Assembly (NCBI GenBank): GCA_002269645.1
Contig: NIVC01000042.1
Location: forward strand, 248,001-312,000
DNA: 64,000 nucleotides
From: Macrostomum lignano
Taxonomy: Eukaryota
Direction: 5' to 3'
Of this stretch, positions 6,150 to 64,000 are shown piece by piece (position 1 is the stretch's first letter; each line of letters begins with the position of its first letter). The notes beneath the pieces were generated by a model. That model searched no databases. It saw only the letters and a list, made by a program, of their open reading frames with translations, and was not told the DNA's origin. The position numbers and the translations under genes were made by a program.

Positions 6150-6822
6150 GACGGGATCCTTAGATTCACCCTTGGAATCCTTAGATTCACCCTGGGTATC
6201 CTTAGATTCACCCTTAGAATCATTAGATTCACCACCCTTGCAATCCTTAGATTCACCCTTAGAATCCTTAGATTCACCCTTGGAATCCTTAGATTCACCC
6301 TTAGAATCATTAGATTCACCACCCTTGCAATCCTTAGATTCACCCTTAGAATCCTTAGATTCACCACCCTTGGAATCCTTAGATTCACCCTTAGAATCCT
6401 TAGATTCACCACCCTTGGAATCCTTAGATTCACCACCCTTGGAATCCTTAGATTCACCCTTGGAATCATTAGATTCACCACCCTTGGAATCCTTAGATTC
6501 ACCACCCTTGGAATCCTTAGATTCACCCTTGGAATCCTTAGATTCACCCTTAGAATCATTAGATTCACCACCCTTGCAATCCTTAGATTCACCCTTAGAA
6601 TCCTTAGATTCACCACCCTTGGAATCCTTAGATTCACCCTTGGAATCCTTAGATTCACCCTTGGAATCCTTAGATTCACCCTTAGAATAATTAGATTGAC
6701 CACCCTTGCAATCCTTAGATTCACCCTTGGAATCCTTAGATTCACCCTTGGAATCCTTAGATTCACCCTTAGAATCCTTAGATTCACCACCCTTGGAATC
6801 CTTAGATTCACCCTTGGAATCA
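6150..6822. repeat. Minisatellite, 21/24-bp unit TTAGATTCACC(ACC)CTTGGAATCC
   Basis: Tandem array; explains the repetitive ORFs at 6132-6954. Confidence 0.95.
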
Positions 6823-6847
6823 TCCTTGACCACTTGTCTCTATTCAG

Positions 6848-30112: not shown

Positions 30113-31280
30113 TGCCAACACATAATCTGCATATTTTGTGATACATCGATAAGATAAGGTGGTGGAACACCTATAGACAACTAAATTAGGACACTTGTTG
30201 GTTTCTTAAAAATAAGCTGGGGCCAGTAAGAAACATATTTGTCGTATCGCTAGTGCACTCAATTAGCTAGCATACTGGAGACACCGGATTTGTCTATGGC
30301 AAAACCCTTTTCAGCGCTATGGCAGGGAAGCCTCTATGGGTTCTCTGCACGACATGCGTTCCTTACCGGTCCCCCAGCTCTTTTCAGTGAAGAAAACCTG
30401 CTTAGCTAAGCCCATAAGCTTATGGTCACAGCTCGCACTCAAGCTAGCTATAGTAAAGCAGCAGCTGCTGTTGCTGGTCAAACGCCCCGCACTGTACTAT
30501 CCCTTCTTATCCAGTCACCCCCTCAACCTCCGCTGTAGTTGTCACTCAGAAGTTGCGGCGCCGGTCAGCATATTGCAATGTCTTGATAGACAGACCCTCA
30601 GCCAAAGCTACAGAATGCGATTCGGGGTCTTATGAAGCCAGCCTGACAAGAAAAATGGACGACCAAAGCTTGGAAAACTACGGGGATTTCCCCACGTCAC
30701 ACCCCCCGATGTACGTCTCGTGGAAATTTCCAATCCGCGCTTCGAAGAGGAACTTTTTTGAAAAGTGCAGCCTCCAAATCCTCAGGCGGTCCTTTTCTAA
30801 TCCTCAGGCCTTATCTCTATGATTTAACTCGCAAAATAGGACTTTCCTACCTGCCCATATAATAAACCGTATGCTCTATAAAATGGTTGAAAAATTGAAA
30901 TGGAAATTGGTCCGACTCTTACAACCCTCTCCACCCCGATAAGAGCTCAGAGCCGCCTCCAATTTTGGCCAAAACTAATCTACCGCGGAGTCCAATTAAG
31001 TTTTATGACCCAACGTGTAATTAAATTTTTCTGCTCACTTGGTCGCCTGTTTGGTCGCAATAAATTAAATGGAATCCAGCCTAAAAAACAAGATGGGATA
31101 CTTGCGGAAAAAGCTACTGTAAGTAGTGCAATGCGAAATACAGCACCTGTTTCACAGCGCAGGGCTGAGAAATTTAGAATTTAGTAAGTACACAGGATAG
31201 AATAAGGGGAACTTACTAAACTTACTCTACTACTGTTTTCTCATTATAATAAGTAGTATATATTGCACACGGTTTCACAG

Positions 31281-32663
<1,383 letters not shown>

Positions 32664-40000: not shown

Positions 40001-42740
40001 TGAGTCTGAGTCTATATGAGTCTGAGTCTATATGAGTCTGAGTCTATATGAGTCTGAGTCTATATGAGTCTGAGTCTATATGAGTCTGAGTCTATATGAG
40101 TCTGAGTCTATATGAGTCTGAGTCTATATGAGTCTGAGTCTATATGAGTCTGAGTCTATATGAGTCTGAGTCTATATGAGTCTGAGTCTATATGAGTCTG
40201 AGTCTATATGAGTCTGAGTCTATATGAGTCTGAGTCTATATGAGTCTGAGTCTATATGAGTCTGAGTGGAATCGGCCATTCCAGACGAGAAGAGGTGGAC
40301 TTCGCCAACTACGTGCAAAGCGGTGAATGGAATCTGCTACGAGTCGACGTGGATCGTCAAGAGGTGCACAGCGAGCAGAGAGGCAGGGAGAGCAGAAGTG
40401 AGAGGGAATAGAGAGAAGCTCAAGGGATATACGAGGAGACGAGGAGGAGGGAGATGGTAAGAGATAGAAGAGATATAGATGGGGAAGGAGAGAGAGGGAG
40501 AGGGAGTGGGAAAGGGGGAGGGAGAGGGAGAGGGAGAGGGAGAGGGAGAGGGAGAGGGAGAGGGAGAGGGGAGGGAGAGGGAGAGGGAGAGAGGGAGGGA
40601 GAGAGAGAGGGAGAGAGAACGGGACAGGGAGAGGGAGAGGGAGAGGGAGAGGGAGAGAGAGCATGAACATGAGCATAAACAGGAGTCTCAGGCAGTGAGT
40701 GGTAAGAATTGCACTGCAGCTGCATAGATGGCAGCTACAAAAACCGGTCACTCGGCGGGTCCGAATTCCAGACGGTCTACCCCATCAGCCCGGTGCCCTA
40801 CCCGGACATCAAGTTCCACATAGTGATCCAGCGCCGCACCCTGTACTACCTGTTCAACATAATATTTCCCTGCCTGTGGCTCACCGTGCTCAGTCTGTTG
40901 GGATTCTGGCTGCCGCCCGACTCAGGGGAGAAGATCACTCTGGGCATCACTGTGCTGCTGGCCTTCTCAGTGTTTATGCTGCTCATAGCTGAGAACATGC
41001 CGGCAACTAGCGAGTTCGTGCCTCTGATCGGTGAGTATAGGGACTCGGGCTTGTTGCTATGGTAACAAAATGTTTGTCAGGAAATATCTAGCAAGGAGCT
41101 TTGATTTGAGTGAGAACTCAACGTCTTTGTACATTAACCAGCTCTTTATAGGGCGCCAATCCTGCTGGAAAGGGGGAGGGTGCCAATCCTGGTGGAAAGG
41201 GGGAGGGTGCCAATCCTGGTGGAAAGGGGGGGTGCCAATCCTGGTGGAAAGGGGGGTGCCAATCCTGCTGGAAAGGGGGGGTGCCAATCCTGCTGGAAAG
41301 GGGGAGGGTGCCAATCCTGCTGGAAAGGGGGAGGGTGCCAATCCTGGTGGAAAGGGGGAGGGTGCCAATCCTGGTGGAAAGGGGGGGTGCCAATCCTGGT
41401 GGAAAGGGGGGTGCCAATCCTGCTGGAAAGGGGGGTGCCAATCCTGCTGGAAAGGGGGAGGGTGCCAATCCTGCTGGAAAGGGGGGGTGCCAATCCTGCT
41501 GGAAAGGGGAGGGTGCCAATCCTGCTGGAAAGGGGGAGGGTGCCAATCCTGCTGGAAAGGGGGGTGCCAATCCTGCTGGAAAGGGGGGGTGCCAATCCTG
41601 CTGGAAAGGGGGAGGGTGCCAATCCTGCTGGAAAGGGGGAGGGTGCCAATCCTGCTGGAAAGGGGGGGTGCCAATCCTGCTGGAAAGGGGGAGGGTGCCA
41701 ATCCTGCTGGAAAGGGGGAGGGTGCCAATCCTGCTGGAAAGGGGGAGGGTGCCAATCCTGCTGGAAAGGGGGGGGGTGCCAATCCTGCTGGAAAGGGGGA
41801 GGGTGCCAATCCTGCTGGAAAGGGGGGGGTGCCAATCCTGCTGGAAAGGGGGTGCCGATCCTGCTGGAAAGGGGGAGGGTGCCAATCCTGCTGGAAAGGG
41901 GGAGGGTGCCAATCCTGCTGGAAAGGGGGGTGCCAATCCTGCTGGAAAGGGGGAGGGTGCCAATCCTGCTGGAAAGGGGGGTGCCAATTCTGGAAAGGGG
42001 GTGCCAATCATGGTGGAAAGGGGGACGGTGCCAAGTCTGCTGCAGGCACAAAGTTCAATTCCTTCTCTAGGGTACGAGCTATGAGCTACGAGTACCACTC
42101 ATAGGAGACTCCTTCGACTTTAAGCCATAGACATTTTCTCGTCTAAGGCTTTCTATTTGACTGTCATTACCCACTGTACACAGCGAAATTAAATCTGACG
42201 CGCACACCCGCAGGCATCTATCTGACAGTGACCATGTCGACCACCTCGCTGTCAATCGTGCTCACAGTATTCGTGCTCCACCTGCACCATGTTGGCCCGA
42301 ACGACCGGCCGGTGCCGCGGCAGCTGCGCAGCCTCCTGTTCAACCGGCTGGCGCCGCTGCTCTGCATGTCGTCCGTGGCGCGCTACCAGCGCAAGGCCGG
42401 CCGTCGGCGCCAGCGCTACGAGGAGTCGCGTCGAGAAGTTGCCGCCGCCGCGGACGCAGCTCAGACGGAGGCCAGCAACGGGTCCGGCGGCGGAGTGGAA
42501 GGAAAGTCAACCACGATGGAGGCGGACAAGCGCTACCGGCAGTACGACCGGATGCAGCGGCACCTGCGCTACCTGATGCGCAAACAGGCCGAGGATGAGG
42601 CCGCCCAGCTGCTCATCAACGATTGGCGAATGCTGGCCTTCATCGTGGATCGCATGCTGTTTTGGCTCTTCTTGGTGGCAGCGTCCGCGTCAACCCTCAT
42701 CATCTTGGTCATCATGCCGCTGTTCAAAGAGGTTGTGTAG
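34046..42740 (+). CDS. Cys-loop nicotinic acetylcholine receptor subunit (alpha9/10-like sequence, cation-type GEK, no vicinal CC). Exons 34046-34193 (signal peptide), alternative exon A 36066(or 35981)-36226 or B 36301-36434, 37507-37551, 37800-37909, 39688-39885, 40285-40397 (donor uncertain), 40728-41030, 42214-42740
   Basis: [19 protein letters not shown], Cys-loop [29 protein letters not shown]1-3 [14 protein letters not shown]...[26 protein letters not shown]4 [18 protein letters not shown]. Confidence 0.93.
34285..35535. repeat. Intronic minisatellite, 16-bp unit TCCTCATCCATTCACA
   Basis: Tandem array in nAChR intron 1. Confidence 0.97.
36490..37165. repeat. Intronic minisatellite, ~51-bp unit containing the palindrome GTCACGTGAC
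   Basis: 13 perfect GTCACGTGAC cores plus 1 variant counted. Confidence 0.96.
37888..38755. repeat. Minisatellite, 33/34-bp unit GGATATTGTGCTGTACAACAG|GTGA(A/G)ATCATGTC, built from the exon 3' end plus splice donor
   Basis: The first unit is the coding end DIVLYN of exon 37800-37909 and its GT donor. Confidence 0.95.
39225..39645. repeat. Intronic minisatellite, 33-bp unit GCTGTGGGGCGCTATCCCTACACTATATTGATA
   Basis: Tandem array. Confidence 0.95.
39938..40266. repeat. Intronic minisatellite, homogeneous 16-bp unit TATATGAGTCTGAGTC
   Basis: About 20 identical copies. Confidence 0.97.
40490..40660. repeat. (GGGAGA)n polypurine tract
   Basis: Direct observation. Confidence 0.95.
41152..42035. 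repeat. G-rich intronic minisatellite, 24-27-bp unit GTGCCAATCCTGCTGGAAAGGGG(GAG)G
   Basis: Tandem array; explains the repetitive ORFs at 41031-42104. Confidence 0.96.
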
Positions 42741-43349: not shown

Positions 43350-44400
43350 GTCTACCTGAGCTACTGGTCTAATTCTACCTGAGCTAATGAGATAATCCTG
43401 CCTAAGCTACTGTCTCAGTACCTGAGCTACTGACCCAATTCTACCTGAGCTACTGAGAAAATTCTACCTGAGCTACTGACCCAATTCTACCAGAGCTACT
43501 GACCCAATTCTACCTGAGCTACTGAACCAATTCTACCTGAGCTAGTGAACCAATTCTACCTGAGCTACTGATCCAATTCTACCTGAGCTACTGACCCAAT
43601 TCTACCTGAGCTACTGAACCAATTCTACCTGAGCTACTGAACCAATTCTACCTGAGCTACTGATCCAATTCTACCTGAGCTACTGACCCAATTCTACCTG
43701 AGCTACTGATCCAATTCTACCTGAGCTACTGAACCAATTCTACCTGAGCTACTGACCCAATTCTACCTGAGCTACTGACCCAATTCTACCTGAGCTACTG
43801 ACCCAATTCTACCTGAGCTACTGATCCAATTCTACCTGAGCTACTGATCCAATTCTACCTGAGCTACTGACCCAATTCTACCTGAGCTACTGGTCCAATT
43901 CTACCTGAGCTAGTGAACCAATTCTACCAGAGCTACTGAACCAATTCTACCTGAGCTACTGGTCCAATTCTACCTGAGCTACTGGTCCAATTCTACCTGA
44001 GCTACTGGTCCATTTCTACCTGAGCTACTGACCCAATTCTACCAGAGCTCCTGACCCAATTCTACCAGAGCTACTGACCCAATTCTACCAGAGCTGCTGA
44101 CCCAATTCTACCTGAGCTACTGACCCAATTCTACCTGAGCTACTGACCCAATTCTACCTGAGCTACTGAACCAATTCTACCTGAGCTACTGAACCAATTC
44201 TACCTGAGCTACTGAACTAATTCTACCTGAGCTACTGAACCAATTCTACCTGAGCTACTGAACCAATTCTACCTGAGCTACTGAACCAATTCTACCTGAG
44301 CTACTGAACTAATTCTACCTGAGCTACTGAACCAATTCTACCTGAGCTACTGAACCAATTCTACCTGAGCTACTGAACTAATTCTACCTGAGCTACTGAA
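43350..44400. repeat. Minisatellite, 23-bp unit ATTCTACCTGAGCTACTGACCCA
   Basis: Tandem array. Confidence 0.97.
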
Positions 44401-47927: not shown

Positions 47928-50900
47928 TGTAGTGTAGTTCAGTGCGATGTACGAGCGTACAATATTGGCGCGCAAATATTATTAGTCACGTGTTGCAATG
48001 TATTACGTAAGACTCACGCGCACTTACTCTTCACATATATAAATATACTTGCAGGGCAAGTCGGCCCATTTCTAAAATTCTTCGTGCACTCGCAAACCCT
48101 CCGATTTTGTCTGAGTCACTACATGGCGTCGCGAGCAAACTATTGACTGATCATCACTCTCTAACCCAGCGCGGTTCCAGCCACACAAACATGGCCCAAG
48201 CTTTGCAACTCACTGCACCAGATGCATTTGATATCGATAGCGATCCACTCACACGAGCCCAGAGATGGAAGACTTGGGCACGGAGGTTCAATAGCTACAT
48301 TCGCGCTGCTGGCATCACAGATGCGACACAACAGCTGGAGTTGCTGGTCTACACAGCGGGAGAGAAGTTGGAAGACTTTATGGAAGACAACAGTGTTCAA
48401 AAAGGAAAATCTACAAACGAGCTCATCCAAAAGCTACAAGAGATCTTCGACCAGAAAAACAGCGTCGTCTTCCTCCGGTACCAATTCGAGACCTGCAGAC
48501 AGGAGGAGGGGGAGTCCATCGATGCGTGGTACCATCGGCTGCGCAAGGCCGCGGATCAATGCGAATTCGGAGAACTACGGGACTCTCTCATCAGGGACAA
48601 GGTGGTCGCCCACTACCGATCGGAGAAGATCAGAAGGGAGCTCCTTCAGCTGAACGATATCTGTCTAGCTGACGTACTGAAGCGAATCCGAGCAAGGGAA
48701 GCTGCGGAGCAACAGGCTCAGGCCATGGAAGAAAACAGCTCAGGTGGCGCCGCCGCCATGACGACCGCGAACGTGGCTGCGCTAGGCCCACCCCGAGCAC
48801 GACCGTCGCAGCCATTCAGAAGGGATCCTGCAATGAAGGACGGTGGCATCAGCTGCGAGCGCTGCGGACGGCCGGGTCATCGAACGTGCGAGGCTGCTAG
48901 AGACAAGGCATGTCGACGCTGCGGTAAGATTGGCCATTTCGCCCGGGCATGTCGGGGAACGTCCAGAATACCCGTGAGAGCTGTCAACGAACCGGACGAT
49001 CGCTCCTACGGGCAAGTCGAATATCTGCAGGACAACTCCACTGAGCACGAGCTTTTCAGCCTCCGAAATAGCGGATCAGCATGGACTCAAGCCACCGTCA
49101 ACGGATTCAAGACAACCCTGCTTATCGACAGTGGAGCGGCCTGCAACATCATCGACAGGGAGGCCTTCGAAAGGATGCCACAGAAGGCCAGGCTCCAAGC
49201 AGCCAGTGATCGGGTCTATCCCTATGGAAGCCAACAGCCACTGAAGCTGCTCGGCAAGACCGACCTACAGGTCAGCGTTTTCGGTTGCCAGGAGACGCTT
49301 CCGTTCCTGGTGCTGGACGGAAAGGGTGCTTGCATAATAGGCCGCAGGAGCGCGGAAGACCTAGGAGTTCTGCGAGTCGGCCCGGAAGACAAGGCAGCGT
49401 GTGAGCTACGCTTGGAGTGTCCGACTGACAGGCTGCTAGCCGGCGTTCCAAAAGACCTTCGGCAGTCCCCAGGTGCTCCATCTTTAGACGAAATCCTCAA
49501 GGAAAATGCACAGGCCTTCGACGGAATCGGCTGTCTTAAGAACTACGCAGCCCGCATCTTCCTGGAAGAGGGCGCAAGACCAGTGTGCCATCCACCATCA
49601 AGAGTGCCAATTCACCTCGCCCCAGCAGTGGACGCCGAGCTCCAGTACCTAGAAGAACAAGGCATCATTGAGCCAGTGGAGGGACCCTGCCCGTGGGTTT
49701 CTCGTATCGTCGTCGTCCCCAAAGAAGCTCCTGGCGAGATCAGGATCACTCAGGATCTGAGGGAGCTAAACAAGTCTGTCGTCAGGGAGCGACACCCAAT
49801 ACCGACCTTTGAGGAGGTAACAGGCGACATGGCAGGAGCGACGCTGTTCTCAGAGTTGGACGTCGCAAAAGCATTCTATCAAATCCCTGTGTCAGAGGAG
49901 TGCCGGCATCTTCTAACTTTTTCAACGCCTCGAGGTCTTCGGCGGCTGACGAGACTCTGCATGGGGCTATCAACGGCGCAGGAAATTCTTCAAGCTGTTA
50001 TGTCATCCGTGCTGGCTGGACTTTCAAAAGTAAAATGGATCCACGATGACATTATTGTCTATGGCCACAGCGTGGCGGAGCATCACAACAATCTGCGGGA
50101 GTGCCTCCAGCGGCTGGCGCAGCACGGACTGACGCTCAACCCGGCCAAGTGCAAGCTGGTACGAACGCAAGTCACCTTCATGGGGATGCGATTGTCGAAG
50201 GACGGAGTCAGGCCAACCGAGTCAAAGCTAGAGGCAGTTAATGCATTTGCAGAGCCAACGAATGTCACGGAGGTGCGCTCGTTCTTGGGACTTGTCAACT
50301 ACCTGGCCGCATTCACCCCGAGGCTGGCGGACCTGGCAAAGCCGCTGCGCAACCTGACAAGGAAGGGCCAGCCCTGGGCATGGGCCGATCTGGAAAGACA
50401 AGCCTTCAGCGACATCAAGTCTCAAATCGCGTCAAGTGGCTCTCTTGCCTTTTTCAACCATCGCCTTCCGACGCAACTCATTGTCGACGCTGGGCCAGCG
50501 GGGCTGGGTGCAATCCTGTCACAGACACAATCGGACGGAACCAGGCGGCCCATCGCATACGCTAGCCGGACACTGTCGGACGTTGAGCAACGCTATTCCC
50601 AAACAGAGAAAGAGGCGTTGGCCGTGAAGTTCGGCTGTTTAAAGTTTCAATTCTACCTCCACGGCGCGCCGATGTTCACGGTGCAAACCGACCACAAGCC
50701 ACTGGTTGCTCTGTTCGGCAGCAGTTCGAGACCCCCTCCGAGAATCGAAAGGATGGCATTGCGCATTCAGCATATGAAATTCACAGTCGAGTACCAGCCG
50801 GGCCCGCTCAACCCGGCAGACGTGCTCAGCCGACAGCCACTGCCGACACCCGCACCGAATGTGGGCGAAGAGCTGGATGCACTTTCCATCGCCGCTGTTG

Positions 50901-52571
50901 TACAGGCGGCCGTATAATTTGCGCTGTCACTGACCAGCGTACAGAACAGCTCGCAAAAGGACGCAACAATTCAAGCGGCGATTCGCGCCTTAGAGACAGG
51001 GCGGTGGAGCCTGGAGTCAGCAGAACTGCGGTCGCTGCATGCGCTGCGTCACGAACTGTCGGCAGTGGACGGGGTGCTCCTACGGGGCCAGCGGATCATC
51101 GTCCCGGTGGCGCTCCGACGGCTTGTACTGGATCTAGCGCACCGGGGGCACCAGTGCACACGTAAGACGCTGGACCGGCTGAACACCAAGGTCTGGTGGC
51201 CAAGGATGCAACTGGAGACGGAGCGCTTCATAGCCACGTGCCGGGCCTGCCTGGCGACCTCGCATGCCGCTGACGTGACTGCATCACCGCTAAAGCCGAC
51301 GCCCATCCCGAAGGCGGCCTGGCTGACGCTCGGGCGGATCTGCTAGGACCCATTCAAGGCAGCATGCTGCTAGTCTGCGTCGATCAATACTCCCGATTTC
51401 CCGAGGTGGAGGTTGTCCAGACCACGACGGCTGAGGCGCTAATCCCTCGACTGAGGAGTTCATTCGTCCGGTTTGGAATCCCTCAAACGTTAGTTACTGA
51501 CAACGGCCCACCGTTCTCTTCAGCCCAGTTCAAGAGCTTCCTGGACAGCTACGGAATTCGGCAGCGCCTCATCACACCGTTACATCCACAGGCCAACGGC
51601 GCCACCGAGCGTTTGAATCGTTCCATCAACAAGGTGGTGCGCGCTGCGATCGCACAGAAGCGCGACTGGAGAGCGGCCCTTGACGAGTGGCTGCTGGCCT
51701 ATCGGTGCACGCCTCAGCGAACAACTGGACGGGCGCCTGCCGAGCTCCTCATGGGTCGCGTGCTGAACGACTCCATCCCGTCGGTCAGACCGTCGAGACC
51801 GGTGGCCATCGCAGACCGGCAGCTTCGGCAGCGCGACGCACTTCGAAAGGCGCAAGGCAAGCTCTACACAGACCGGAAGCGACTGGCGAGACCGCACAAG
51901 CTCAAGGTTGGCGACACAGTGCTGCGGCGGCGACTGAATCCGCTCAAGGGAGACACGCCGTTCGAGTGGGACCCCTGGCTCATCGAGGAGATCAAGGCGG
52001 ACTCGGCGACGATACGACAGGGTGTCAGAGTTTGCAGGCGGCACTGCACCGACCTAAAGCGAGTGGCACCGGAGTCCGAGCCTGACAATCTGGGCGAGCT
52101 GGCAGCGATGCCGCAACCGGAAGTGAATGCGCCTCCGCCGCAGCCAGCCGCAGGCGAGCGAGCGGCCTCGCCCATTGCGTTGCGGCCACATCCCCGGGCG
52201 GCGAAGGTGAACGTGAACTACAAGGCTTGAAAAGGTTTTTGTTAAACGGTAGCATCTGATTTTTTTTATTTTTTGCTGGACTTTTGCTAAAATTGTAACA
52301 TAATGAAATTTAACAAAAACAGATTTTTTAAACCCAACTTTAAAAGTTTGCTTTTAAGCCGTATTTGAGGAGAGATGTAGTGTAGTTCAGTGCGATGTAC
52401 GAGCGTACAATATTGGCGCGCAAATATTTTTAGTCACGTGTTGCAATGTATTACGTAAGACTCACGCGCACTTACTCTTCACATATATAAATATACTTGC
52501 AGGGCAAGTCGGCCCATTTCTAAAATTCTTCGTGCACTCGCAAACCCTCCGGTTTTGTCTGAGTCACTACA
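47928..52571 (+). mobile_element. Ty3/Gypsy LTR retrotransposon (Mag-like), full length
   Basis: LTRs 47928-48123 and 52376-52571 (196 bp, 2 mismatches, TGTAGTG...CACTACA), 5-bp TSD TTACT, PBS-like TGGCGTCGCG at 48124, PPT GAGGAGAGA, domain order gag(2 CCHC)-PR-RT-RH-IN. Confidence 0.98.
48191..52230 (+). pseudogene. Gypsy gag-pol polyprotein with an in-frame stop (50915-50917) and a frameshift (about 51333)
   Basis: CERCGRPGHRTC and CRRCGKIGHFARAC knuckles, LIDSGA protease, WIHDDII RT, VDAGPAGLGA RNase H, H-H-C-C zinc finger and VDQYSRF...VTDNGP...GATER integrase. Confidence 0.93.
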
Positions 52572-55500
52572 TTACTCAGCCCCGATGAAGCTGAAAGCAT
52601 GCTGATCACTTCTTCAACAGCAATCCAGTTGGGGTTTTCGCTCGTCTCTTCCTCCACTCCGTAAAGTCGATTTTCACTTCCGTGAGTGAGGATGGCGACA
52701 ACTGCGCAGCTGCCGCACTCCTGAGAGAAATCCTCCTCCACGGCTTTTCTCATATCAGAAGCCTTCAAATCGTGTTTCACATTTATGCTTGCCTCCGCAA
52801 ATCCTAGCCTATGAAACAGGTGGGCCAAGTTTTCGCAGTCGATTCTCGTGCCTCTTCGGCGGCTTTGTCGGTCGAATCTCTCATTACTGATAATGAGGAC
52901 CTTTCCATCGCCAGTGTTTTCGTAGCAGGCGTCCATATCGGAGACCGGCAATGGTGAAAATCTTGGCTTGTCTTTAAACATCGGGTCATTCTTCAGGAGC
53001 TTGTCTTCGAACCGGAACGCCTCGATTCGGAGGTCCGAGTTGTCTGAAAGCCCCTTGTGGAAGAAGTCCTTCTTAGTGTTGTTTGGGGTCAGCTTTTTAA
53101 CAATATATTCTACTGGAGCACATTTGCCAGGATTATCTGGGTCGTCCCTGTGCTCGATCTCATCCTTCAGGTTGTTCAAGAAGGAGCTCATGTTATTGCA
53201 GTCGCCTCTTTTGTATATCAGTGCCACGTTGGGGTGGTTACGCTTCCAATCTTCTTCAGATCTCGATTTGATGTCACTTGCCTCTTTTGTAGCGACGTCG
53301 AATAGCGGATCGCCTGGATCAATAAGCCGACAGAATATTAGTAGCTTAGGCGTGTCTAGGTGATACTTTTCCGATATTGCTTGCAACACATGATACAGCG
53401 TGGTAACCAATTCGTTTGGATCGTTTGGATCGTGACGATCTCCAGCAATAATGAGAAACACACTGAGTCTGCGTTGATCTTTTGTGTCACTAATCATAGA
53501 AGAAGTGATTCCTTGTTTACAGCTAAACCTGCTTTCGGTATCCAGTCCAATGCTTTTAAACAGCTGCTCATATTGTTCTAAAGCTTTGTAGTTGTCTTCA
53601 CGTTTATCCAGCTCCAAGTCTTCGTAAATATGAGCGGCTCCGCGGATGTACTTAAGACCTAAAATTTAATATGGGCTAAGTTGTCTTACGGTTTAACTGT
53701 TTGAGTCTATTTTGAAGAGTTCAATGGGAAGTCCCTATCATGCGGTACCCTGATCGCTCAAACTGCCCAAGACATAAAATGCGTCACAAAAGTGCAGACT
53801 AGCAATTCACCTGTGCCAGCCAGGCTGTCCTCCGGCGGAACTCCATCCGAAGCCTCTGGAGTCCGTTCAGAAAGCTTTCCTGCCAAAACGGAGACAAAGA
53901 AAAAATTGCTCATACTCGAAGGAAGTAGACAAGGTACTTGAGTCACTTAAAAACTTTGTGAACTTCGCATTCAAGCGTTCTCAGTTTTTAAAAAAGTCTC
54001 AACTATTCATGGCCTCATTTTTCAATATTTCTGCTACTGAAAGTGAAACCTCAAAACCATAAACAGTGCCCGTTATGTATTATGCTCCCAATCAGCGCTA
54101 GAATTTTAGCGTAAAATAAAATTACCAGCAGCAGCCATTTCGAATTGCAGTTCCGATTTCTTGCAGACCACCAAAATACGGACAGGAATCGACAAGGTCC
54201 TTAAAGCCAGAGAATGGGAGATCAATTACTCTATAGAAAAATGTCAGTTGAGTACCACTCTAAAACAACGGATTGTTAGTTAACTAACAACCAAGGATTA
54301 GATTGCTCAGAAACTTACCTTTCCACCTTTTAGTTACGTGCTTAAATTAACCTAGCTTTTAGATAGAAAGGGAACTTCAGAAAAACTAAATGCACAGTGA
54401 TAGCGTACACTTGTACATTACTTGTAGTCAGACAATAGCTTTGCTTGCTTTTACCCGGGGAGGGAGGGTTTGAAAAAAATGCCGCAAAGCAAAGCCACCC
54501 AAAACATAGGCAAGCTTCAATGCATTGTACAGTGCTGGATTGGGATGGTACTGAGTAAGTCGTATGCTGCCCCCTCTCTCGTGCTGCCCAATAAAATTCA
54601 ACTCGCACTACAGTATCTTGATTACGAAAAAGAGAAACGGGAATTGCTTTGTGACAATTTCAAAAAATTGAATTTGACCAAAGTTTATCTACGAAGCAAG
54701 GACAACTTAAGTAGAGTCAAGAGACAAGATGACAAGAGTCTGAGTCATCTTGTCATTATTTTAAACGTTTTTTTCAAGTGACAGACCAATTTAACATGAA
54801 AAATCGATTGATGCGTCGTTAGAGCAGCATGTGAGGCACAAAATAGTGTGATTAGAACTTTCTCTGACACTGTTAAGAGACCCAATCACTGTTTTGGTGT
54901 TGAAAATCGTGAAATTTCCTATCTCCGTAGTGTATTTTTCCGGTGAAACCTGCCTTTAAAACTATTTCTGAACGAAAAGCTTTATGAATATCGATAGAGC
55001 AATAAGAAAGGCACAACATATCCAAAGATGAACACTGGATCTGCCTCCTATCAAAATCAATAACAATTTTTGTGCTGAAAAAATTAAAACCTCCTATCTC
55101 TGTAGTGTATTTTTCGACGAAAAGTTGCCTTCAAAACATTTACCATAGATCTCGAGTGTAGCGTCCTATATATATGTTACTTTGAGTAGTCCTTGCTACG
55201 AAGTACCTATGTCTTCTTAAAGCATATTTTCTTAGCTTTCATATGAGGCAGGCTAAAGTACGTAAAAGTATATTTTTCACATTGTTTTAGTGAAGCTCGG
55301 AAAAGCCAAAAAGACTGTGATACGCTCGTATTCCAATTTAACTCCTTGGAAGCTTGGCATTTTGGCAAAAATCGCCGGCGATTCATGCCGATTTAGTCAC
55401 TCTTAATGAGGCTAGTGAGGTAAGGAGATGATCGTCTACAACTAGGTTGAGCAGTTTGAAGCAGACAGGACTGTCCAAATTTCGCTGATTTGCCCTGGTC

Positions 55501-56306
55501 GGTCCACCCATGTGCTCTAGGCTCCAATGCTCTCGCTGATCGAGTTCTCGATATCCTGGATGAGCACTGCCGGCTATGCAGACAGACTGGACACCCGGAG
55601 CACAACACTAAAAAGCCAACGTTTCTGTCATTCACCCTGCGTGTCTCTTTCCATTGTTTCCCATTGAGAACAACAGAAAAACAGTAGAAACTGTTGAAAA
55701 AACGGGCAACAATTATAAAAAGACCTAAACTCTCTTGAGAGGTTGGGATTAGGATACACTGCAAGTACATATCCAATTGCACTGACAAATCACATAGAAA
55801 TATGATGCTCATATTTTTGCACCGATAATCAGGAGATAAACCATAAACCACAGATAAACCACAGACGAAAAAACTGTGACATCAAGCCCGACAAGGATTT
55901 ACGAGTACAAGCGCACGTAAAACACCACGTCTTACAGATCAATAACTGATGGAGCATGTGAAGGTGGAAGACAAGGATCGCTCTTGAGGGTCATCTTATT
56001 ATGCACGTGGCTGTGTGAGTCAGTAAAGTCAGTAAAAGCTGGAATAATAAATGATCTGCATTTCCTTTTAAATCATTGCCGCGTTTTCTTATGTGTTTTT
56101 TTCGCATGCATAAATTTTCGCTTCAATTTTTACTTAGTTTCCCAAAGCTCGGGGTTAACAGCTGTAGGTTGGCAGTTATCTACAGCTGTTACTGTGACGA
56201 GTTTACCTATTTACCCACGGTATGTATGTAACTTTAAGCTACTATTGTGACGCCTTGAAAAGATTTTTCGAACCTCTGAATATACTTAATGTGACGTGTA
56301 TAGTTT

Positions 56307-56384
56307 GTATGTATGTATGTATGTATGTATGTATGTATGTATGTATGTATGTATGTATGTATGTATGTATGTATGTATGTATTG

Positions 56385-56415
<31 letters not shown>

Positions 56416-56642
56416 TGTATGTATGTATGTATGTATGTATGTATGTATGTATGTATGTATGTATGTATGTATGTATGTATGTATGTATGTATGTATGTAT
56501 GTATGTATGTATGTATGTATGTATACATGTATGTATGTATGTATGTATGTATGTATGTATGTATGTATGTATGTATGTATGTATGTATGTATGTATGTAT
56601 GTATGTATGTATGTATGTATGTATGTATGTATGTATGTATTG

Positions 56643-56673
<31 letters not shown>

Positions 56674-56797
56674 TGTGTGTATGTATATATACGTATGTAT
56701 GTATATATGTATGTATACATGTATGTATGTATGTATGTATGTATGTATATATGTATGTATGTATATATGTATGTATGTATATATGTATGTATGTATG

Positions 56798-56828
<31 letters not shown>

Positions 56829-56845
56829 ATATGTATGTATGTATG

Positions 56846-56876
<31 letters not shown>

Positions 56877-56881
56877 ATATG

Positions 56882-56915
<34 letters not shown>

Positions 56916-56996
56916 TGTATGTATGTATGTATGTATGTATGTATGTATGTATGTATGTACGTACGTATGTATGTATGTATGTATGTATGTATGTTT
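56307..56996. repeat. (TATG)n microsatellite, about 690 bp
   Basis: Direct observation. Confidence 0.99.
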
Positions 56997-57141
56997 GTTT
57001 GTAACTTAACTCCTCCAAGGCTACTTGCAAGTTAGCGTTGAAACTTTTATGGGAAAACTGCAAGCAAACTATAAAGATATCATGTTCAAAGGATATATAT
57101 GCCTTCTAACCAAAACAAAAAAGTCAAATCTGACTACCTAC

Positions 57142-58149: not shown

Positions 58150-58504
58150 CTTCACAATGAATCAGAAAAGCAGTATTACTAATTTACATAGTTAAGATTG
58201 GTTTTATATTACCTACAACAAATATTAAAATGATCAGGAACCAATGTTTCACAAGGCTAAAGAAATCTAATTCCATTTTATGTAATAGTACACGAATTTA
58301 TTGCCCGCTAAGGTCTCCCAGACTTCTAAAAAGATATTAGATCATTAGGATTATTAGATGAGTACCACGTAGAATTAATGGCTACTTACAATGACACTGA
58401 TCCAACACCGCTTGTTGAGAAGTGAATCGCGATCAAAGCGTCTGATGCAGAATATTCCATGCTTTTCTTCGGTTGAGAAACAAGTTATAAGCTCCTCTTT
58501 TGTG

Positions 58505-58975
58505 AAAATTTCCTCGTCTCTCTGCTTCTTTCGCTTCGCCTATTCCGCTTCCTCGTCTCTCTGCTTTAATCGCTTCTTCGAATCCTCATCGTCTCTATGC
58601 TTCGAGTGCTTCTTCGAATCCTCATCGTCTCTATGCTTCGAGTGCTTCTTCGAATCCTCATCGTCTCTATGCTTCGAGTGCTTCTTCGAATCCTCATCGT
58701 CTCTATGCTTCGAGTGCTTCTTCGAATCCTCATCGTCTCTATGCTTCGAGTGCTTCTTCGAATCCTCATCGTCTCTATGTTTCGAGTGCTTCTTCGAATC
58801 CTCATCGTCTCTATGTTTCGAGTGCTTCTTCGAATCCTCATCGTCTCTATGCTTCGAGTGCTTCTTCGAATCCTCATCGTCTCTCTGCTTCTTTCGCTTC
58901 GCCTCTTCCACTTCCTCGTCTCTCTGCTTCTTTTGCTTCGCCTCTTCCACTTCCTCGTCTCTCTGCTTCGATCGC
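58505..58975 (-). repeat. 33-bp tandem repeat encoding a charged (DDEDSKKHSKHR-like) 11-aa unit on the minus strand
   Basis: Tandem array inside ORF 58540-59052; one copy carries a TAG in place of GAG; probably the low-complexity tail of the adjacent transposase relic. Confidence 0.85.
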
Positions 58976-59329
58976 TTTGCTTCTTCCTCGTTTGTCTGCT
59001 TTGATTGTTTTGTCTCTTCATTGTCTCTCTGATTCGCTCGATCATTCGACATCCGAAGTTTGTACTTTCGTTTTTTGCTGCTTCAAGCTGCTTCTAGCTA
59101 GTTTGACCTTTTTAGGTCGTTTTCTCGACCAGCCGTCTCCATCCGGGTTTTTTGATGAATTCGTCGACTTTCGTTTTCGAGCGCGCCTTGGCTGAAGCAC
59201 AGTTTTTGATTGGCGCTCTAGACGCTTTAATCTAGAGTCACCTCCAGCTCTTCTATTACAAATATCGCCAATTGCAGACGAGATCCGGAGGCAGGCAATA
59301 CTCGACTTTTGCACCATCTGAACCAGGCT

Positions 59330-61560: not shown

Positions 61561-62183
61561 TATTAATACTGAACTTTCCGAATTCATTGTTCTTTTTAAG
61601 GAGTGGAAGAACGACTTGAGATACTCAAGTTATTCGCAAAACGCCGGTATCATTGTCAAGATGCTGCCGAAACTGTTCTGCAGTCACGTAACTTAGCTCC
61701 ATGATGCGTACGCCCTACGAGTAGAGTATGCGGGCCTATTTTTAAGGTCGCAACAATTCTGAAATGCAAATATTGATGGCAAAATTTTTCTGCGCAGTTA
61801 GTTACCTGTGCGAACTAGACATTTGTATTGGGAAATCCCATTTTTCTTCGGTAGAGAAGAAAATTGTATTTGTTCCCATTCGGAAGGTAACAGTGGCACT
61901 TTCTTGCAGTTAAAGGCCATACCGAGTGGTTTTCAAACCGCTATGATTAATGGTATGTACAATTCCCGACAATAATTAATTTGTCCATCTTTGTCCAACT
62001 GTCACATCTTATAAAAAACAGATTGAAAGGAATGGAGTTTTGGTTTGTGTTTGGGTTGGAGTGGGTTTAATGTGTTTTGATGAGTGTGTTTAAGGACGAG
62101 TTTAAATAATTCTCTAGTAGAAATTGCCTACTGAACAAACCATATTTGACTGTCAGCTTCAAATACTAATTGAAGCGAAAAGA

Positions 62184-62229
62184 AACCGTAAAGACGGTCT
62201 CTAACTATTAGGACTCAATTTATTGCATG
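62184..62229 (+). other. Flatworm spliced-leader-like exon sequence AACCGTAAAGACGGTCTCTAACTATTAGGACTCAATTTATTGCATG, not followed by a GT donor
   Basis: Has the flatworm SL hallmarks (5' CCGT..ACGGT, 3' terminal ATG); 39/44 identical to the Macrostomum lignano SL as recalled (CCGTAAAGACGGTCTCTTACTGCGAAGACTCAATTTATTGCATG). Confidence 0.8.
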
Positions 62230-64000
62230 TCTATTTAAACGCTGAGCGTTTAAATAGCGCCGCCGCCTCCTGGTGCCGCCGCCAAGCATGCTAGCTGTGC
62301 GTTGTAAGGCCTCCACGCTGCGGCTGCGGCTGCCAAGAGCGGCACACCATCCACTCGGCGGGGCCGCCGAAGTGAGCGTCGATGCAAAGAACGGCGCCGT
62401 GAGCGAAATCGGCGTGGTCGAATTCGGGGACGCGGGCGACGAGCTGCAGGCAGCCGGCCCCTGCCAACTGGTGGTGCGGATCCGCTGGGTGGCGCCAGGG
62501 ACCGTGAGGTTCAAAATCACCGGACTCCAGCCTACCCAAAATGCGCACAGCAACAGCTTAGAATTGCTACCTGGAACTGCCAAACTTTGCGAGCAAAGTG
62601 GAGGCAACACCTTTTGGCCCAGCTTGCAGGCGACCTACAACTTGATATAATTATGCTGCAGGAGCTCTCCATCACGGCCGAGCCTGGGCTTCACCAGGAG
62701 AACATAGGCGGCGACTGGCTCCTGCAATACACATCAGCAGACTCGAAAGGGCGGGAAGGAATTGGCGTTCTAACCGGGCCGAGGCTTCAGCAAAGTACAC
62801 ACTGTGAGAGCCTCTCGCCGCGGCTTCTGCGCGTCGACATTCGACTCCGCAGGCGTAACATGCGGCTCTTCTGTGCCTATGCGCCCACGGCTGCGCGCCC
62901 TGAGGAGCACCGGCAGTTTCTGGAGTTCCTGTCAGCGCAGCTGGAGAAGACCGCTCAACGCGACACTGTACTGGTACTCGGAGACCTCAACGTTGTCATG
63001 CGAAGGTATGAGCGCGCTCGCTTTGTAACACCACGTGAAAACAACAACACTAATGCCCTAGTGGATTTCATGGACCGCCACAAACTGGTCTCAGCAAACG
63101 CGCTGTTCAGGAAGCCGCTTCACAGATTAGCAACATTTGCTGGCTGTAAACGGTCACGTTGGAAAGCGTCTGGAAAATTTGCTAGGAAGAGACTCGCACA
63201 GCTGGACCACGTGCTGCTTCGCCAGCGAGAACGACGACGAGTAACTAATGCGATACGGTGGCTCCGTTGGCAGTGCGGTCAGACCATAGGCTGCTCTACT
63301 GCGACCTGCGCCTGAGGGACCCGCTATATCGGCCACCGAAAAAAAAACAGCCAAAGCGCTACTTCCGCGCCCTACGCGACCCGGTTACAAGTGGCCGCTT
63401 CTGTCTGGCATTTGCCGAGGCGCTGGAAGAACGGCCGGATACAACAACCCCAGCCGAGTACTCGGACATCAGTGCCGCCATCCAAGCCGCCGCCAGCAAA
63501 ACTCTGCCGCTGGTGAAGCCAGCAGAAAGGAGTCGGCCAGTGTGGCAGAACGACGAAGTGCTGCGGCAGGCCCGGCTGACAGTGGAGAGACTGCGGAGGA
63601 GCGGACAGCCCGCGGAGAAGGAAGAGGAGACTCTAGCAGAGACATTTAAAGCCCGGTAGAGACCGCTATTCAGGAGATCACGGACGCCGGTCCCGACAAG
63701 AAACGCGTGCCGTCTGTTCGGTCGTCAACCAGCTGACAGGCCGCGAGAGACGCAACGCTCTGAAACTGGCGGCTGACACGCCCGAAGAGAGGCGAAACGA
63801 GCTGCGGACCTTCTTCTCTGGTATCGTCAACGCGCCCCCTTCGCCGCAAAGGGACATGTCATTGCCCACGGAGGTTGAGCTGCCAGATGAGAGCTCCATC
63901 ACCATCGACGAGGTGCTCCAACTTGCAAAGAAGACACCAGGCAACAAGGCTACTGGACCCGACGACGTGCCTGTCGAGGTGCTGCGCCTCCCTCAGGTCG
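62184..64000 (+). mobile_element. Non-LTR retrotransposon (APE endonuclease + RT, single-ORF, RTE-like layout), 5' part only, decayed
   Basis: RIATWNCQTL, DIIMLQE, CAYAPT, VLGDLN, LDHVLL, SDHRLL APE motifs; pre-RT motif GNKATGPDDVPVEVLR at the window end; frameshift near 63258, stop at 63657-63659. Confidence 0.9.

What the first reader, a model, noticed from the sequence alone, without database searches (positions are those of the whole stretch)
62184..64000. A LINE retrotransposon whose 5' end is a complete spliced-leader sequence
Seen: a 46-nt flatworm SL-like exon ending in ATG sits about 80 nt before the open frame of an APE-RT LINE and is followed by TCT, not by the GT donor an SL RNA gene would have. 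The 5 differences from the recalled M. lignano SL fall in a segment that can still fold (GTC-T-CTAA/CTA/TTAG-GAC), which looks like a functional SL variant rather than random decay. Known: SL-gene-targeting retroelements (SLACS/CRE/CZAR, NeSL) use restriction-like, not APE, endonucleases, and relict SLs mark retroposed genes in dinoflagellates. Inference, three models: (a) the element's RNA is SL trans-spliced and was reverse-transcribed to the very 5' end; (b) the family has permanently adopted the SL as its head; (c) an APE-type element inserts site-specifically at the SL exon/intron junction. Any of these would be an unusual retroelement-SL coupling.
Basis: partly seen in the sequence, partly recalled or inferred. 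Interest (0 to 1): 0.88.

Follow-up and report, generated by a model that had tools for sequence, protein, structure and literature searches.

The report
Spliced-leader-capped LINE retrocopy in a flatworm
A dead copy of a jumping gene (an RTE-like LINE) in the flatworm Macrostomum lignano carries the worm's whole 44-base spliced leader on its front end, most likely because its RNA was trans-spliced before being copied back into DNA; this has already been noted in passing in other flatworms and in Hydra, so it is a neat example, not a new kind of thing.

Summary
The window is Macrostomum lignano (Mlig_3_7, contig NIVC01000042.1). Positions 62186-62229 cover all 44 nt of the published M. lignano spliced leader (SL), with 39/44 identical. 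The SL copy ends exactly at the exon's last base (ATG), has no GT donor or SL intron after it, and lies one base before a 12-bp hairpin.

That hairpin is the conserved 5' head of a single-ORF, ~3.3-kb, APE+RT, RTE-like LINE clade. All eight relatives' heads examined have it, with different arm sequences. The start codon of the LINE ORF lies in or just after its 3' arm.

The copy is dead: start codon lost, one in-frame stop, at least three frameshifts.

Best explanation (about 0.6): a LINE transcript was SL trans-spliced and reverse-transcribed to its very 5' end. Insertion into an SL gene is disfavoured, and so is a U6-L1-type template switch.

The five clustered SL differences break the SL RNA's own stem without compensation, so a "functional SL variant" is not supported.

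SL-transposon fusions have been reported in Schistosoma and 24 parasitic flatworms, and SL-capped transposon transcripts in Hydra. Novelty: new member of a known kind.

I could not read the 3' junction or other genomic copies.

The parts
62186..62229 (+). Complete copy of the 44-nt Macrostomum spliced-leader exon (39/44 identical), ending in the SL's terminal ATG (62227-62229). Its ATG opens only a 3-codon mini-ORF (MSI*).
   Evidence: published SL in PMC5173321, PMC8629364 and PMC10468722 suppl..
62203..62211 (+). Variant centre of the SL copy: canonical TACTGCGAA is AACTATTAG here. The five substitutions are at 62203, 62207-62209 and 62211. They form the palindrome CTAA-CTA-TTAG.
   Evidence: positions 18, 22, 23, 24, 26 of 44; P(span<=9)=0.0024; the changes break SL RNA stem I pairs.
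62230..62230 (+). Junction base (T) between the last SL base and the LINE head. No GT donor and no SL intron follow.
62231..62257 (+). Conserved 5' head hairpin of the LINE: CTATTTAAACGC / TGA / GCGTTTAAATAG (12 bp, 3-nt loop).
   Evidence: -12.5 kcal/mol. A homologous hairpin is present in 8/8 heads, with different arm sequences (alignment).
62254..62556 (+). Arg-rich N-terminal region of the single LINE ORF (frame of 62101). The start codon is lost (ATA at 62254-62256, where most relatives have ATG). There is an in-frame TAA at 62305-62307.
   Evidence: relatives read ATG CCG CCG CCT CC... and run on as one ORF of about 1055 aa.
62557..63315 (+). Apurinic/apyrimidinic-type endonuclease (APE) domain, LRIATWNC...SDHRLLYCDL, broken by a frameshift at about 63249.
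   Evidence: Pfam PF03372, E=1e-11; tblastn frame change at 63249.
63316..64000 (+). Linker and first part of the reverse-transcriptase region (to ...GPDDVPVEVLRLPQV), cut by the window end. Further frame breaks lie near 63657 and 63700.
   Evidence: Relatives P0001 and P0004-P0007 carry RVT_1 downstream.

Best explanation
This is a retrotransposed, now dead, copy of an RTE-like LINE whose RNA had received the host spliced leader by SL trans-splicing.

The LINE clade has almost no 5' UTR. There is only a hairpin, with the ORF's start codon in or just after its 3' arm. Such elements are probably transcribed by read-through from neighbouring host transcription (inferred). A splice acceptor at or just before the element's head was used by the trans-splicing machinery (inferred). 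That gave an RNA of the form cap-SL(44 nt)-T-hairpin-ORF.

The element's own APE/RT then copied this RNA into DNA by target-primed reverse transcription, all the way to the first SL base (inferred from the anatomy). The SL exon was thereby fixed in the genome without its intron.

The copy later decayed: start codon lost, a stop codon, frameshifts, and possibly the five SL changes.
For: 1. The SL copy is complete and ends at exactly the exon's last base. Similarity to two real SL RNA genes (L018, L049) starts at CCG and stops at GCATG. The genes continue GTAAGACACCG...; the window continues TCTATTT.
2. The LINE side is also complete. One base after the SL begins the hairpin, which is the conserved head of the clade. 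It is present in 8/8 heads with different arm sequences. It is followed by the conserved (ATG)CCGCCGCCTCC start of a single ORF of about 1055 aa. Both partners being intact at the junction is what splicing plus full-length reverse transcription predicts.
3. The species was identified as M. lignano. There 30-39% of genes are SL trans-spliced (PMC8629364, PMC5730564).
4. There is no SL intron, 5S or snRNA gene anywhere in the window.
5. Precedent: genome-encoded SL-TE fusions in flatworms were explained the same way (PMC5832876; PMC12582326). SL-capped TE transcripts are seen in Hydra (PMC12220107).
6. Five relatives carry tandem 5' units upstream of the hairpin. In four (L023-L026) the units end in TTTGCAG or TTTTCAG, which matches the M. 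lignano trans-splice acceptor motif [T/C]TNCAG; L027 has one degenerate unit ending GCGG.
Against: - The 3' end of the element and any target-site duplication lie beyond base 64000. So it is not shown that the SL and the LINE entered as one insertion.
- No other M. lignano copy could be read, and no progenitor with an AG acceptor was seen.
- None of the relatives' contigs carries an SL. Four have an informative 5' flank (L001, L002, L024, L027). Three start inside the unit array.
- The SL-to-hairpin spacing here (3 nt before the ATTT core) is shorter than the 8-9 nt expected from the CAG of the relatives' units.
- The five SL differences are clustered (P=0.0024), which simple neutral decay does not explain.
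- No RNA evidence was available.
Confidence: 0.6

Rival explanations
1. Heritable SL head. An SL-capped copy became a master element, so the SL (with its variant centre) is now part of the family consensus and is passed on to daughter copies.
For: The family is multi-copy and old. P0011 is a gene model built on another, also broken, M. lignano copy. The variant centre differs from every SL found elsewhere and is non-randomly clustered. That could reflect evolution as LINE sequence rather than as SL.
Against: Passing on an SL that starts exactly at SL base 1 requires transcription to start precisely there, and nothing suggests that. The 3' splice AG is lost on trans-splicing, so the head cannot be re-made the same way. 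Relatives with a visible 5' flank have no SL. No second SL-bearing copy was seen, though this could not be searched.
Confidence: 0.1
2. Template switching. During reverse transcription the LINE RT reached the 5' end of an ordinary LINE RNA and jumped onto an SL-containing RNA, as in U6-L1 chimeric retrocopies.
For: LINE RTs are known to switch templates at RNA 5' ends (established knowledge of U6-L1 chimeras and R2 template jumping). Relatives show tandem duplications of their 5' terminal unit, which could be template-jump products. The units loosely resemble the SL's 3' end, which could give microhomology (post hoc).
Against: A jump onto SL RNA should start at that RNA's 3' end and bring in the intron half (GTAAG...Sm site). 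That half is absent. A jump onto a trans-spliced mRNA landing exactly at the exon junction is a roughly 1-in-many coincidence. The free SL exon is only a transient splicing intermediate.
Confidence: 0.1
3. Insertion into an SL RNA gene or pseudogene. An APE-type LINE landed, by site preference or by chance, exactly at the SL exon/intron boundary. The rest of the SL gene would then lie after the LINE's 3' end.
For: The 3' junction is unseen, so this cannot be excluded. APE-type LINEs specific for small-RNA genes exist (established knowledge: Tx1-group and Dada elements). A disrupted SL gene would be free to accumulate the five changes.
Against: The upstream flank shows no similarity to the flanks of two real SL RNA genes, not even the shared TCTTTG just before the SL; this is a low-power cross-species test. 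Relatives are not next to SLs, so the clade is not SL-specific. Random insertion into about 8 genes of 109 bp in a 580-Mb genome (PMC8629364), at exactly the splice junction, is very improbable. The match also starts at exactly the base where the published 44-nt transcriptome SL starts; the G that precedes CCG in the two SL genes and in the M. cliftonense SL is an A here.
Confidence: 0.07
4. Assembly artefact or chance adjacency of an unrelated SL-bearing retro-fragment and a LINE.
For: S. mansoni authors raised chimeric assembly as a caveat for their SL-TE cases (PMC5832876). Mlig_3_7 is a repeat-rich long-read assembly (PMC5730564).
Against: Both partners end or start at their natural termini within one base. 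A random mis-join or independent insertion would rarely produce that. The 44-mer match is far beyond chance.
Confidence: 0.03

Closest known systems
Genome-encoded SL sequences fused to LTR/LINE elements in parasitic flatworms (S. mansoni, Boroni et al. 2018, PMC5832876; 24 trematodes and cestodes, Calvelo et al. 2025, PMC12582326)
   Same: Same phylum and same anatomy: an SL exon without the SL RNA gene features, next to a retrotransposon. The proposed origin is also the same: integration of retrotransposon transcripts that had been SL trans-spliced.
   Different: Those reports are counts made while filtering false SL genes (597 loci, 'partial leader sequences'; 6 loci in S. mansoni). The text read gives no nucleotide-level description of the junctions. 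Here the SL is full length, joined within one base to the conserved head of a full-length-type element, in a free-living macrostomid for which the searched literature reports no such case.
Relict spliced leaders on retroposed genes in dinoflagellates (Slamovits and Keeling 2008; PMC5585692, PMC12014239)
   Same: A DNA-encoded SL at the 5' end marks passage through a trans-spliced RNA and reverse transcription.
   Different: There the cargo is host genes, and the relicts are truncated at an SL-internal AG and stacked by repeated cycles. Here the cargo is the retrotransposon itself and there is a single complete SL. A test of whether the relatives' 17-nt 5' units are stacked SL relicts was only weakly suggestive.
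SL trans-splicing of transposon transcripts (Hydra Iso-Seq, PMC12220107; C. elegans Cer1 subgenomic mRNA, PMC3315495)
   Same: Shows at the RNA level that transposon transcripts are substrates of the host SL machinery. This is the step inferred here.
   Different: Those are RNA observations with no genomic SL-bearing copies described. Here there is only the DNA footprint and no RNA data.
SL-gene-specific non-LTR elements (SLACS, CZAR, CRE in trypanosomatids; NeSL-1 in nematodes)
   Same: A non-LTR retrotransposon physically adjacent to SL exon sequence.
   Different: Those carry a restriction-enzyme-like endonuclease and insert at a fixed site inside tandem SL RNA genes, so SL gene sequence continues on the far side. 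This element has an APE endonuclease, its relatives are not next to SLs, and there is no SL gene context on the visible side.
U6-L1-type chimeric retrocopies made by RT template switching
   Same: A small nuclear RNA sequence fused to the 5' end of a LINE-derived cDNA.
   Different: U6 chimeras contain the whole small RNA up to its 3' end. Here only the exon half of the SL RNA is present, cut exactly at the splice donor.
HDV-like ribozymes at the 5' end of co-transcribed LINEs (R2, RTE, L1Tc; PMC3185411, PMC4035085)
   Same: A functional analogue: a way for a promoter-less LINE to free its 5' end from a read-through host transcript.
   Different: A ribozyme leaves a 5'-OH and no host sequence, whereas trans-splicing adds a capped 44-nt leader. 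No ribozyme or other Rfam family matches here.

Membership tests
Retrocopy of an SL trans-spliced RNA (relict-SL class) | 5' end carries the species' own SL exon sequence | tested here: met
   Species identified as M. lignano. All 44 nt of its SL are covered at 39/44 identity.
Retrocopy of an SL trans-spliced RNA (relict-SL class) | SL ends exactly at the exon 3' end, with no GT donor, intron or Sm site | tested here: met
   Similarity to SL RNA genes L018 and L049 stops at GCATG. TCTATTT follows here in place of GTAAGACACCG.
Retrocopy of an SL trans-spliced RNA (relict-SL class) | No SL RNA gene promoter or flank upstream | tested here: inconclusive
   No similarity to the upstream flanks of L018 or L049. 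But those two flanks barely resemble each other, and M. lignano's own SL gene flank was not available.
Retrocopy of an SL trans-spliced RNA (relict-SL class) | Target-site duplication enclosing SL + element + 3' tail | not testable with these tools
   The 3' end lies about 1.3-1.6 kb beyond base 64000. No tool gave access to NIVC01000042.1 past 312,000 (reached only window base 60917).
Retrocopy of an SL trans-spliced RNA (relict-SL class) | Source transcript has an AG acceptor at the junction, or SL-LINE reads exist in RNA | not testable with these tools
   No other M. lignano copy and no RNA-seq could be searched. Relatives' units end in [T/C]TNCAG, which is only indirect support.
SL-gene-specific non-LTR retrotransposons (SLACS/CZAR/CRE, NeSL) | Restriction-enzyme-like endonuclease downstream of the RT | tested here: not met
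   N-terminal APE domain (Pfam PF03372). Relatives are APE + RVT_1 only.
SL-gene-specific non-LTR retrotransposons (SLACS/CZAR/CRE, NeSL) | Family members sit at a fixed site inside SL RNA genes | tested here: not met
   0 of 4 relatives with a visible 5' flank are next to an SL. None of the SL-containing loci from metagenomes or MAGs is next to a LINE.
SL-gene-specific non-LTR retrotransposons (SLACS/CZAR/CRE, NeSL) | Remainder of the SL RNA gene continues after the element's 3' end | not testable with these tools
   The 3' junction is outside the window.
RTE-clade LINE | About 3.2-3.3 kb, one long ORF with N-terminal APE and central RT, no RNase H or C-terminal zinc knuckle detected | tested here: met
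   L002 and L023 have a single ORF of 1060 and 1054 aa. Pfam finds only Exo_endo_phos and RVT_1. The window copy is colinear with them as far as it goes.
RTE-clade LINE | Very short 3' UTR ending in a simple-repeat tail rather than poly(A) | tested here: met
   Met in relatives only: (TTG)n in L001, L002 and L023; (ATTTCT)n in L021. The window's own tail is not visible.
RTE-clade LINE | RT groups with RTE in a phylogeny of LINE clades | not tested
   No reference LINE RT set was available offline. Two wider protein searches timed out. The clade name therefore rests on architecture only.
U6-L1-type template-switch chimera | Whole small RNA, including its 3' end, fused to the LINE cDNA | tested here: not met
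   Only the exon half of the SL RNA is present; the intron half is absent.
Functional SL RNA gene (variant SL) | GT donor, Sm-like site, and stem I pairing the exon with the donor | tested here: not met
   No donor or Sm site. Grafted onto the L018 intron, the variant loses stem I in the centroid fold and 5.8 kcal/mol.

The most novel reading that the evidence does not exclude
This LINE clade may use SL trans-splicing as its normal way of making a capped, translatable RNA. It has no 5' UTR beyond one conserved hairpin holding or directly preceding the start codon. Upstream of that hairpin, five relatives carry homogenised tandem 16-17-nt units. In four of them each unit differs from the hairpin arm only by ending CAG instead of CAC, which matches the host trans-splice acceptor motif [T/C]TNCAG. 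On this reading the units are a built-in array of trans-splice acceptors (or stacked SL relicts, as in dinoflagellates). They would free the element from read-through host transcripts, playing the role that HDV-like ribozymes play in R2, RTE and L1Tc. The window copy would then be the footprint of that life cycle.
Probability: 0.2. Interest if true: 0.7.

Novelty: new member of a known kind. Interest (0 to 1): 0.35.

Why it matters
A DNA-encoded, full-length SL on the head of a full-length-type LINE is a molecular fossil. It shows that this element's RNA went through the host's trans-splicing machinery, and that reverse transcription ran to the very cap-proximal base.

Practical consequences:
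- Such loci are false positives when SL RNA genes are searched for by sequence. They can also make SL-trimmed RNA-seq mapping and gene-boundary calling misleading in Macrostomum.
- SL-tagged copies mark retrotransposition events that can be separated from ordinary copies.

If the broader reading holds (acceptor arrays at the 5' end of a UTR-less LINE), it would be a host-machinery-based answer to the old question of how promoter-less LINEs obtain a defined, capped 5' end. As it stands, this is one decayed copy and one more example of a phenomenon already noted in flatworms and Hydra.

Tried and rejected
- **Other copies in the window:** none by blastn or tblastn.
- **Reading past base 64000 and fetching other M. 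lignano copies:** failed. Ten window ORFs were looked up and only the Gypsy ORF is on record. Its locus reaches only window base 60917.
- **Caspase gene as a route to a homeolog:** its homologs (P0026, P0027) exist only in UniRef, with no contig on record. I did not try to fetch them.
- **P0011:** no gene on record.
- **Absence of close LINE relatives in the protein database:** not evidence of low copy number. GenBank annotation of Mlig_3_7 excluded repeat-overlapping transcripts (PMC5730564).
- **My first reading of the N-terminus** (frame 2, MLAVRCKAS...) was wrong. It is an off-frame ORF, the same mistake made by gene model P0011. The conserved frame is that of the APE domain.
- **HDV-like ribozyme, SL RNA or other Rfam family at the head:** none, even at E<=10.
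- **SL scans of public collections:**
  - viral contigs: nothing
  - JGI metagenomes: one SL RNA gene and five trans-spliced transcripts, all canonical
  - GTDB genomes: one more canonical SL RNA gene, in a contaminated MAG
  - no variant SL and no SL-LINE junction anywhere
- **The variant SL in the literature:** no hit.
- **Relatives' 5' units as SL relicts:**
  - local alignment: not significant
  - global alignment to the 17-nt SL tail: p 0.002-0.5, chosen post hoc and not independent
  - verdict: unsupported, not excluded
- **Shared TAGTAG motif upstream of SL genes and of the window SL:** by my own rough estimate, about what chance gives.
- **Wider protein searches with full-length relatives:** timed out twice.
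- **L003, L021/L022 and L066:** 5'-truncated or have a different head, so uninformative.
Full report
**What is there**

The stretch 62186-62229 reads CCGTAAAGACGGTCTCTAACTATTAGGACTCAATTTATTGCATG.

An exact 908-aa match of the window's Gypsy-type ORF places the window on Macrostomum lignano Mlig_3_7, GCA_002269645.1, contig NIVC01000042.1. Record coordinate = window coordinate + 248,000.

The M. lignano spliced leader (SL) rebuilt from its transcriptome is the 44-mer CCGTAAAGACGGTCTCTTACTGCGAAGACTCAATTTATTGCATG (PMC5173321; 35-nt core in PMC8629364). [quoted passage not shown]

So the window holds the whole SL, from its first to its last base. Identity is 39/44, with 17 exact bases on the left and 18 on the right. 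Each half occurs once in the window, against about zero expected by chance.

**The junction**

I found two real SL RNA genes of environmental macrostomids:
- L018, a JGI metagenome contig
- L049, a contaminant contig in a "Flavobacteriaceae" MAG

Both carry the canonical exon followed by GTAAGACACCG..., a stem-loop, ATTTTTAG (Sm-like) and a terminal stem-loop.

Similarity between the window and these genes begins at CCG and ends at GCATG. Nothing upstream or downstream matches, and no SL intron sequence occurs anywhere in the 64 kb. The window continues T-CTATTTAAACGC-TGA-GCGTTTAAATAG, which is a perfect 12-bp hairpin.

**The element**

Downstream lies an APE endonuclease domain (Pfam Exo_endo_phos, E=1e-11), then the linker and the first RT motifs, cut by the window end. 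The closest proteins in a 5.8-billion-protein collection are 50-61% identical APE+RVT_1 proteins from metagenome and Logan contigs. There are also a few M. lignano gene models.

I fetched ten relatives' contigs. They show the following.
- In L002 and L023 one continuous ORF of 1060 and 1054 aa runs from an ATG through an Arg-rich N-terminal region, the APE and the RT.
- The 3' UTR is about 50-60 nt and ends in (TTG)n or (ATTTCT)n, not poly(A).
- The total length is about 3.3 kb.

This is RTE-like architecture. I did not test the clade by phylogeny.

Upstream of the start codon there is only a hairpin, and the ATG lies in or just after its 3' arm (...AAATATG CCG CCG CCT CC). The hairpin is predicted in all eight heads examined (z -2.4 to -4.5). 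The arm sequences differ:
- TTTAAACGC/GCGTTTAAA in the window
- TTTATACGCC/GGCGTATAGA in L001
- TTTGCAC/GTGCAAA in L002 and L025
- TTTGCACAC/GTGTGTAAA in L024

That is, changes occur on both sides of the stem.

In the window the SL therefore abuts, within one base, the conserved 5' head of the element.

**State of the copy**

- The start codon is lost: ATA at 62254-62256.
- There is an in-frame TAA at 62305-62307.
- The frame shifts at about 63249, about 63657 and about 63700.

My first reading of the N-terminus (MLAVRCKAS..., another frame) was an off-frame artefact. The UniRef model P0011 makes the same mistake on a second, also broken, M. lignano copy of this family. So the family is multi-copy and old.

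Its absence from GenBank proteins is uninformative, because repeat-overlapping transcripts were removed from that annotation (PMC5730564).

**How it most likely arose**

Three things are shown:
- a complete SL exon, cut exactly at the splice donor position
- a complete LINE head starting one base later
- no SL gene features on the visible side

From these I infer that a LINE-containing transcript was SL trans-spliced at an acceptor at or just before the head. The capped SL-LINE RNA was then reverse-transcribed to its first base and integrated.

The host makes this plausible: 30-39% of M. lignano genes are trans-spliced (PMC8629364, PMC5730564). An element with no 5' UTR is likely to depend on read-through transcription, though that is an inference.

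**Rivals**

- *Template switch of the U6-L1 type.* This should bring in the 3' (intron) half of the SL RNA, which is absent.
- *Insertion into an SL gene exactly at the exon/intron boundary.* This needs either site specificity or a very improbable hit. Site specificity is contradicted by four relatives with a visible 5' flank and no SL. The improbable hit would be on about 8 x 109 bp in 580 Mb (PMC8629364). It stays formally open because the 3' junction is outside the window.
- *A heritable SL head.* This would require transcription to begin exactly at SL base 1. I could not test it.
- *Mis-assembly.* This would rarely join two natural termini.

**The five differences**

They lie at 62203, 62207-62209 and 62211, all within 9 nt. 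The probability of five random positions out of 44 spanning 9 nt or less is 0.0024.

The short local hairpin is indeed predicted, but it is no better than shuffles (z -1.1).

In the SL RNA fold, exon bases 16-21 pair with the donor GUAAGA, and bases 23-26 pair with exon bases 39-42. The changes break both helices while bases 39-42 are unchanged here. Grafted onto the L018 intron, the variant loses stem I in the centroid structure and 5.8 kcal/mol.

The exon is invariant in three named species, two environmental SL genes and five metatranscriptome transcripts. I therefore do not read this as a functional SL variant. Whether it is a rare expressed variant, evolution of the LINE head, or one complex mutation is unexplained.

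**An unexpected feature of the relatives**

In L023-L026, one to five tandem 16-17-nt units lie upstream of the hairpin. Each unit is identical to the hairpin-proximal unit except that it ends CAG where the hairpin arm has CAC. L027 has one degenerate unit ending GCGG.

TTTGCAG and TTTTCAG match the M. lignano trans-splice acceptor motif [T/C]TNCAG (PMC8629364). This fits built-in acceptors. It could equally be a by-product of cap-G copying plus template jumping at the RNA 5' end.

A third idea is that the units are stacked relicts of the 17-nt SL tail after its internal AG, as in dinoflagellates. It got only weak, post hoc support.

The spacing in the window (3 nt before the ATTT core, against 8-9 nt in relatives) does not match the relatives' CAG position.

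**Comparison with what is known**

- 597 SL-like loci next to LTR and LINE elements were discarded in a 24-species survey of parasitic flatworms, with exactly this explanation (PMC12582326).
- In Hydra about 30% of TE Iso-Seq reads carry an SL (PMC12220107).
- A Cer1 mRNA in C. elegans is SL1 trans-spliced (PMC3315495).
- Relict SLs mark retrogenes in dinoflagellates (PMC5585692, PMC12014239).

This locus is therefore a new, well-resolved member of a known kind. It is the first I could find for a free-living macrostomid, with a complete SL and a defined junction. It is not a member of the SL-gene-targeting families (SLACS/CZAR/CRE/NeSL): the endonuclease type and the relatives' locations both fail that test.

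**Limits**

No tool gave access to the rest of the M. lignano genome or to its RNA-seq. The target-site duplication, the 3' flank, the family's other 5' ends and direct RNA evidence are all missing. They are listed under decisive next steps.

**Scores**

Interest is 0.35. The more novel reading, not excluded, is that this UTR-less LINE clade routinely relies on SL trans-splicing through an acceptor array at its head. I give that a probability of about 0.2, with interest of about 0.7 if true.

Noticed in passing
L025:1-100, L024:1530-1650, L026:1-45, L023:1-50, L027:85-135: Relatives of the LINE carry 1-5 tandem 16-17-nt units upstream of the 5' hairpin. In L023-L026 each unit equals the hairpin-proximal unit except for a final G instead of C (TTTGCAG or TTTTCAG against ...CAC). 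That matches the M. lignano trans-splice acceptor motif [T/C]TNCAG. L027 has one degenerate unit ending GCGG. Several contigs begin inside the array, so what lies upstream is unknown.
   Followed up: partly
window 62231-62257; L001:47-77, L002:177-205, L023:22-47, L024:1613-1642, L025:79-103, L026:7-32, L027:104-131: An 11-14-bp hairpin with the LINE start codon in or just after its 3' arm is conserved across elements only 50-60% identical in protein. The arm sequences change on both sides of the stem. Its function is unknown (translation control, 5'-end recognition or a promoter element are possibilities).
   Followed up: partly
window 62203-62211: The five SL substitutions create a perfect palindrome CTAA-CTA-TTAG. 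They also create a branch-point-like CTAAC followed by TATTAG|G. This is non-random clustering with no explanation.
   Followed up: partly
L049:1589-1700 (JAGQZA010000190.1, 'MAG: Flavobacteriaceae bacterium HKST-UBA79'): A 3.7-kb contig of a bacterial MAG holds a complete macrostomid-type SL RNA gene (canonical exon + GTAAGACACCGTTGATCC...). This is eukaryotic (flatworm) contamination of the bin.
   Followed up: partly
L018:616-725 (Ga0302322_100095745); L011-L014 and L019 (Ga0316592): A JGI metagenome contig carries a canonical Macrostomum-type SL RNA gene. Five contigs of another JGI sample begin with the canonical SL, the pattern expected of trans-spliced transcripts. So macrostomid flatworms appear to be present in these environmental samples.
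   Followed up: partly
P0011, P0013, P0014 (UniRef, M. lignano ML2 gene models): P0011 is a 'reverse transcriptase domain-containing protein' model that translates another copy of this LINE partly in the wrong frame. P0013 and P0014, named MUS81, contain an RVT_1 domain and match this LINE, so they look like chimeric gene models.
   Followed up: partly
window 48107-52230 (+): A Ty3/Gypsy-type LTR retrotransposon with long open gag-pol ORFs (936 aa and 288 aa, the latter integrase-like). It belongs to an 11-member 90% cluster annotated in M. lignano (BOX15_Mlig014458 family).
   Followed up: partly
window 52520-53617 (-): First large exon of a caspase (CASPASE_P20) gene, 100% identical to UniRef A0A1I8I2..., with an 83% identical paralogue in the same species. 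It lies 8.6 kb from the LINE head and points away from it.
   Followed up: partly
window 6132-6898, 29161-30180, 31286-32252, 34262-35696, 36533-37060, 39106-39648, 40236-42104, 43430-44360, 56222-57063, 58391-59052: Many long micro- and minisatellite arrays, open in several frames at once. They make up a large share of the window, in line with the 15% simple and tandem repeats reported for this genome.
   Followed up: no
window 62036-62095: A G/T-rich stretch (GGTTTGTGTTTGGGTTGGAGTGGGTTT...) lies about 90 nt upstream of the SL. It resembles a degenerate (TTG)n LINE tail, but no LINE coding remnant lies upstream of it.
   Followed up: partly
window 1046-3386, 7120-8256, 10224-14586, 22754-26566, 42228-42740: Exons of ordinary host genes, judged from the ORF translations only: eIF3e-like, kelch-repeat-like, an RNA-recognition-motif/SET1-like gene with long low-complexity tracts, a protein kinase, and a Cys-loop receptor C-terminus. 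No domain search was run on them.
   Followed up: no
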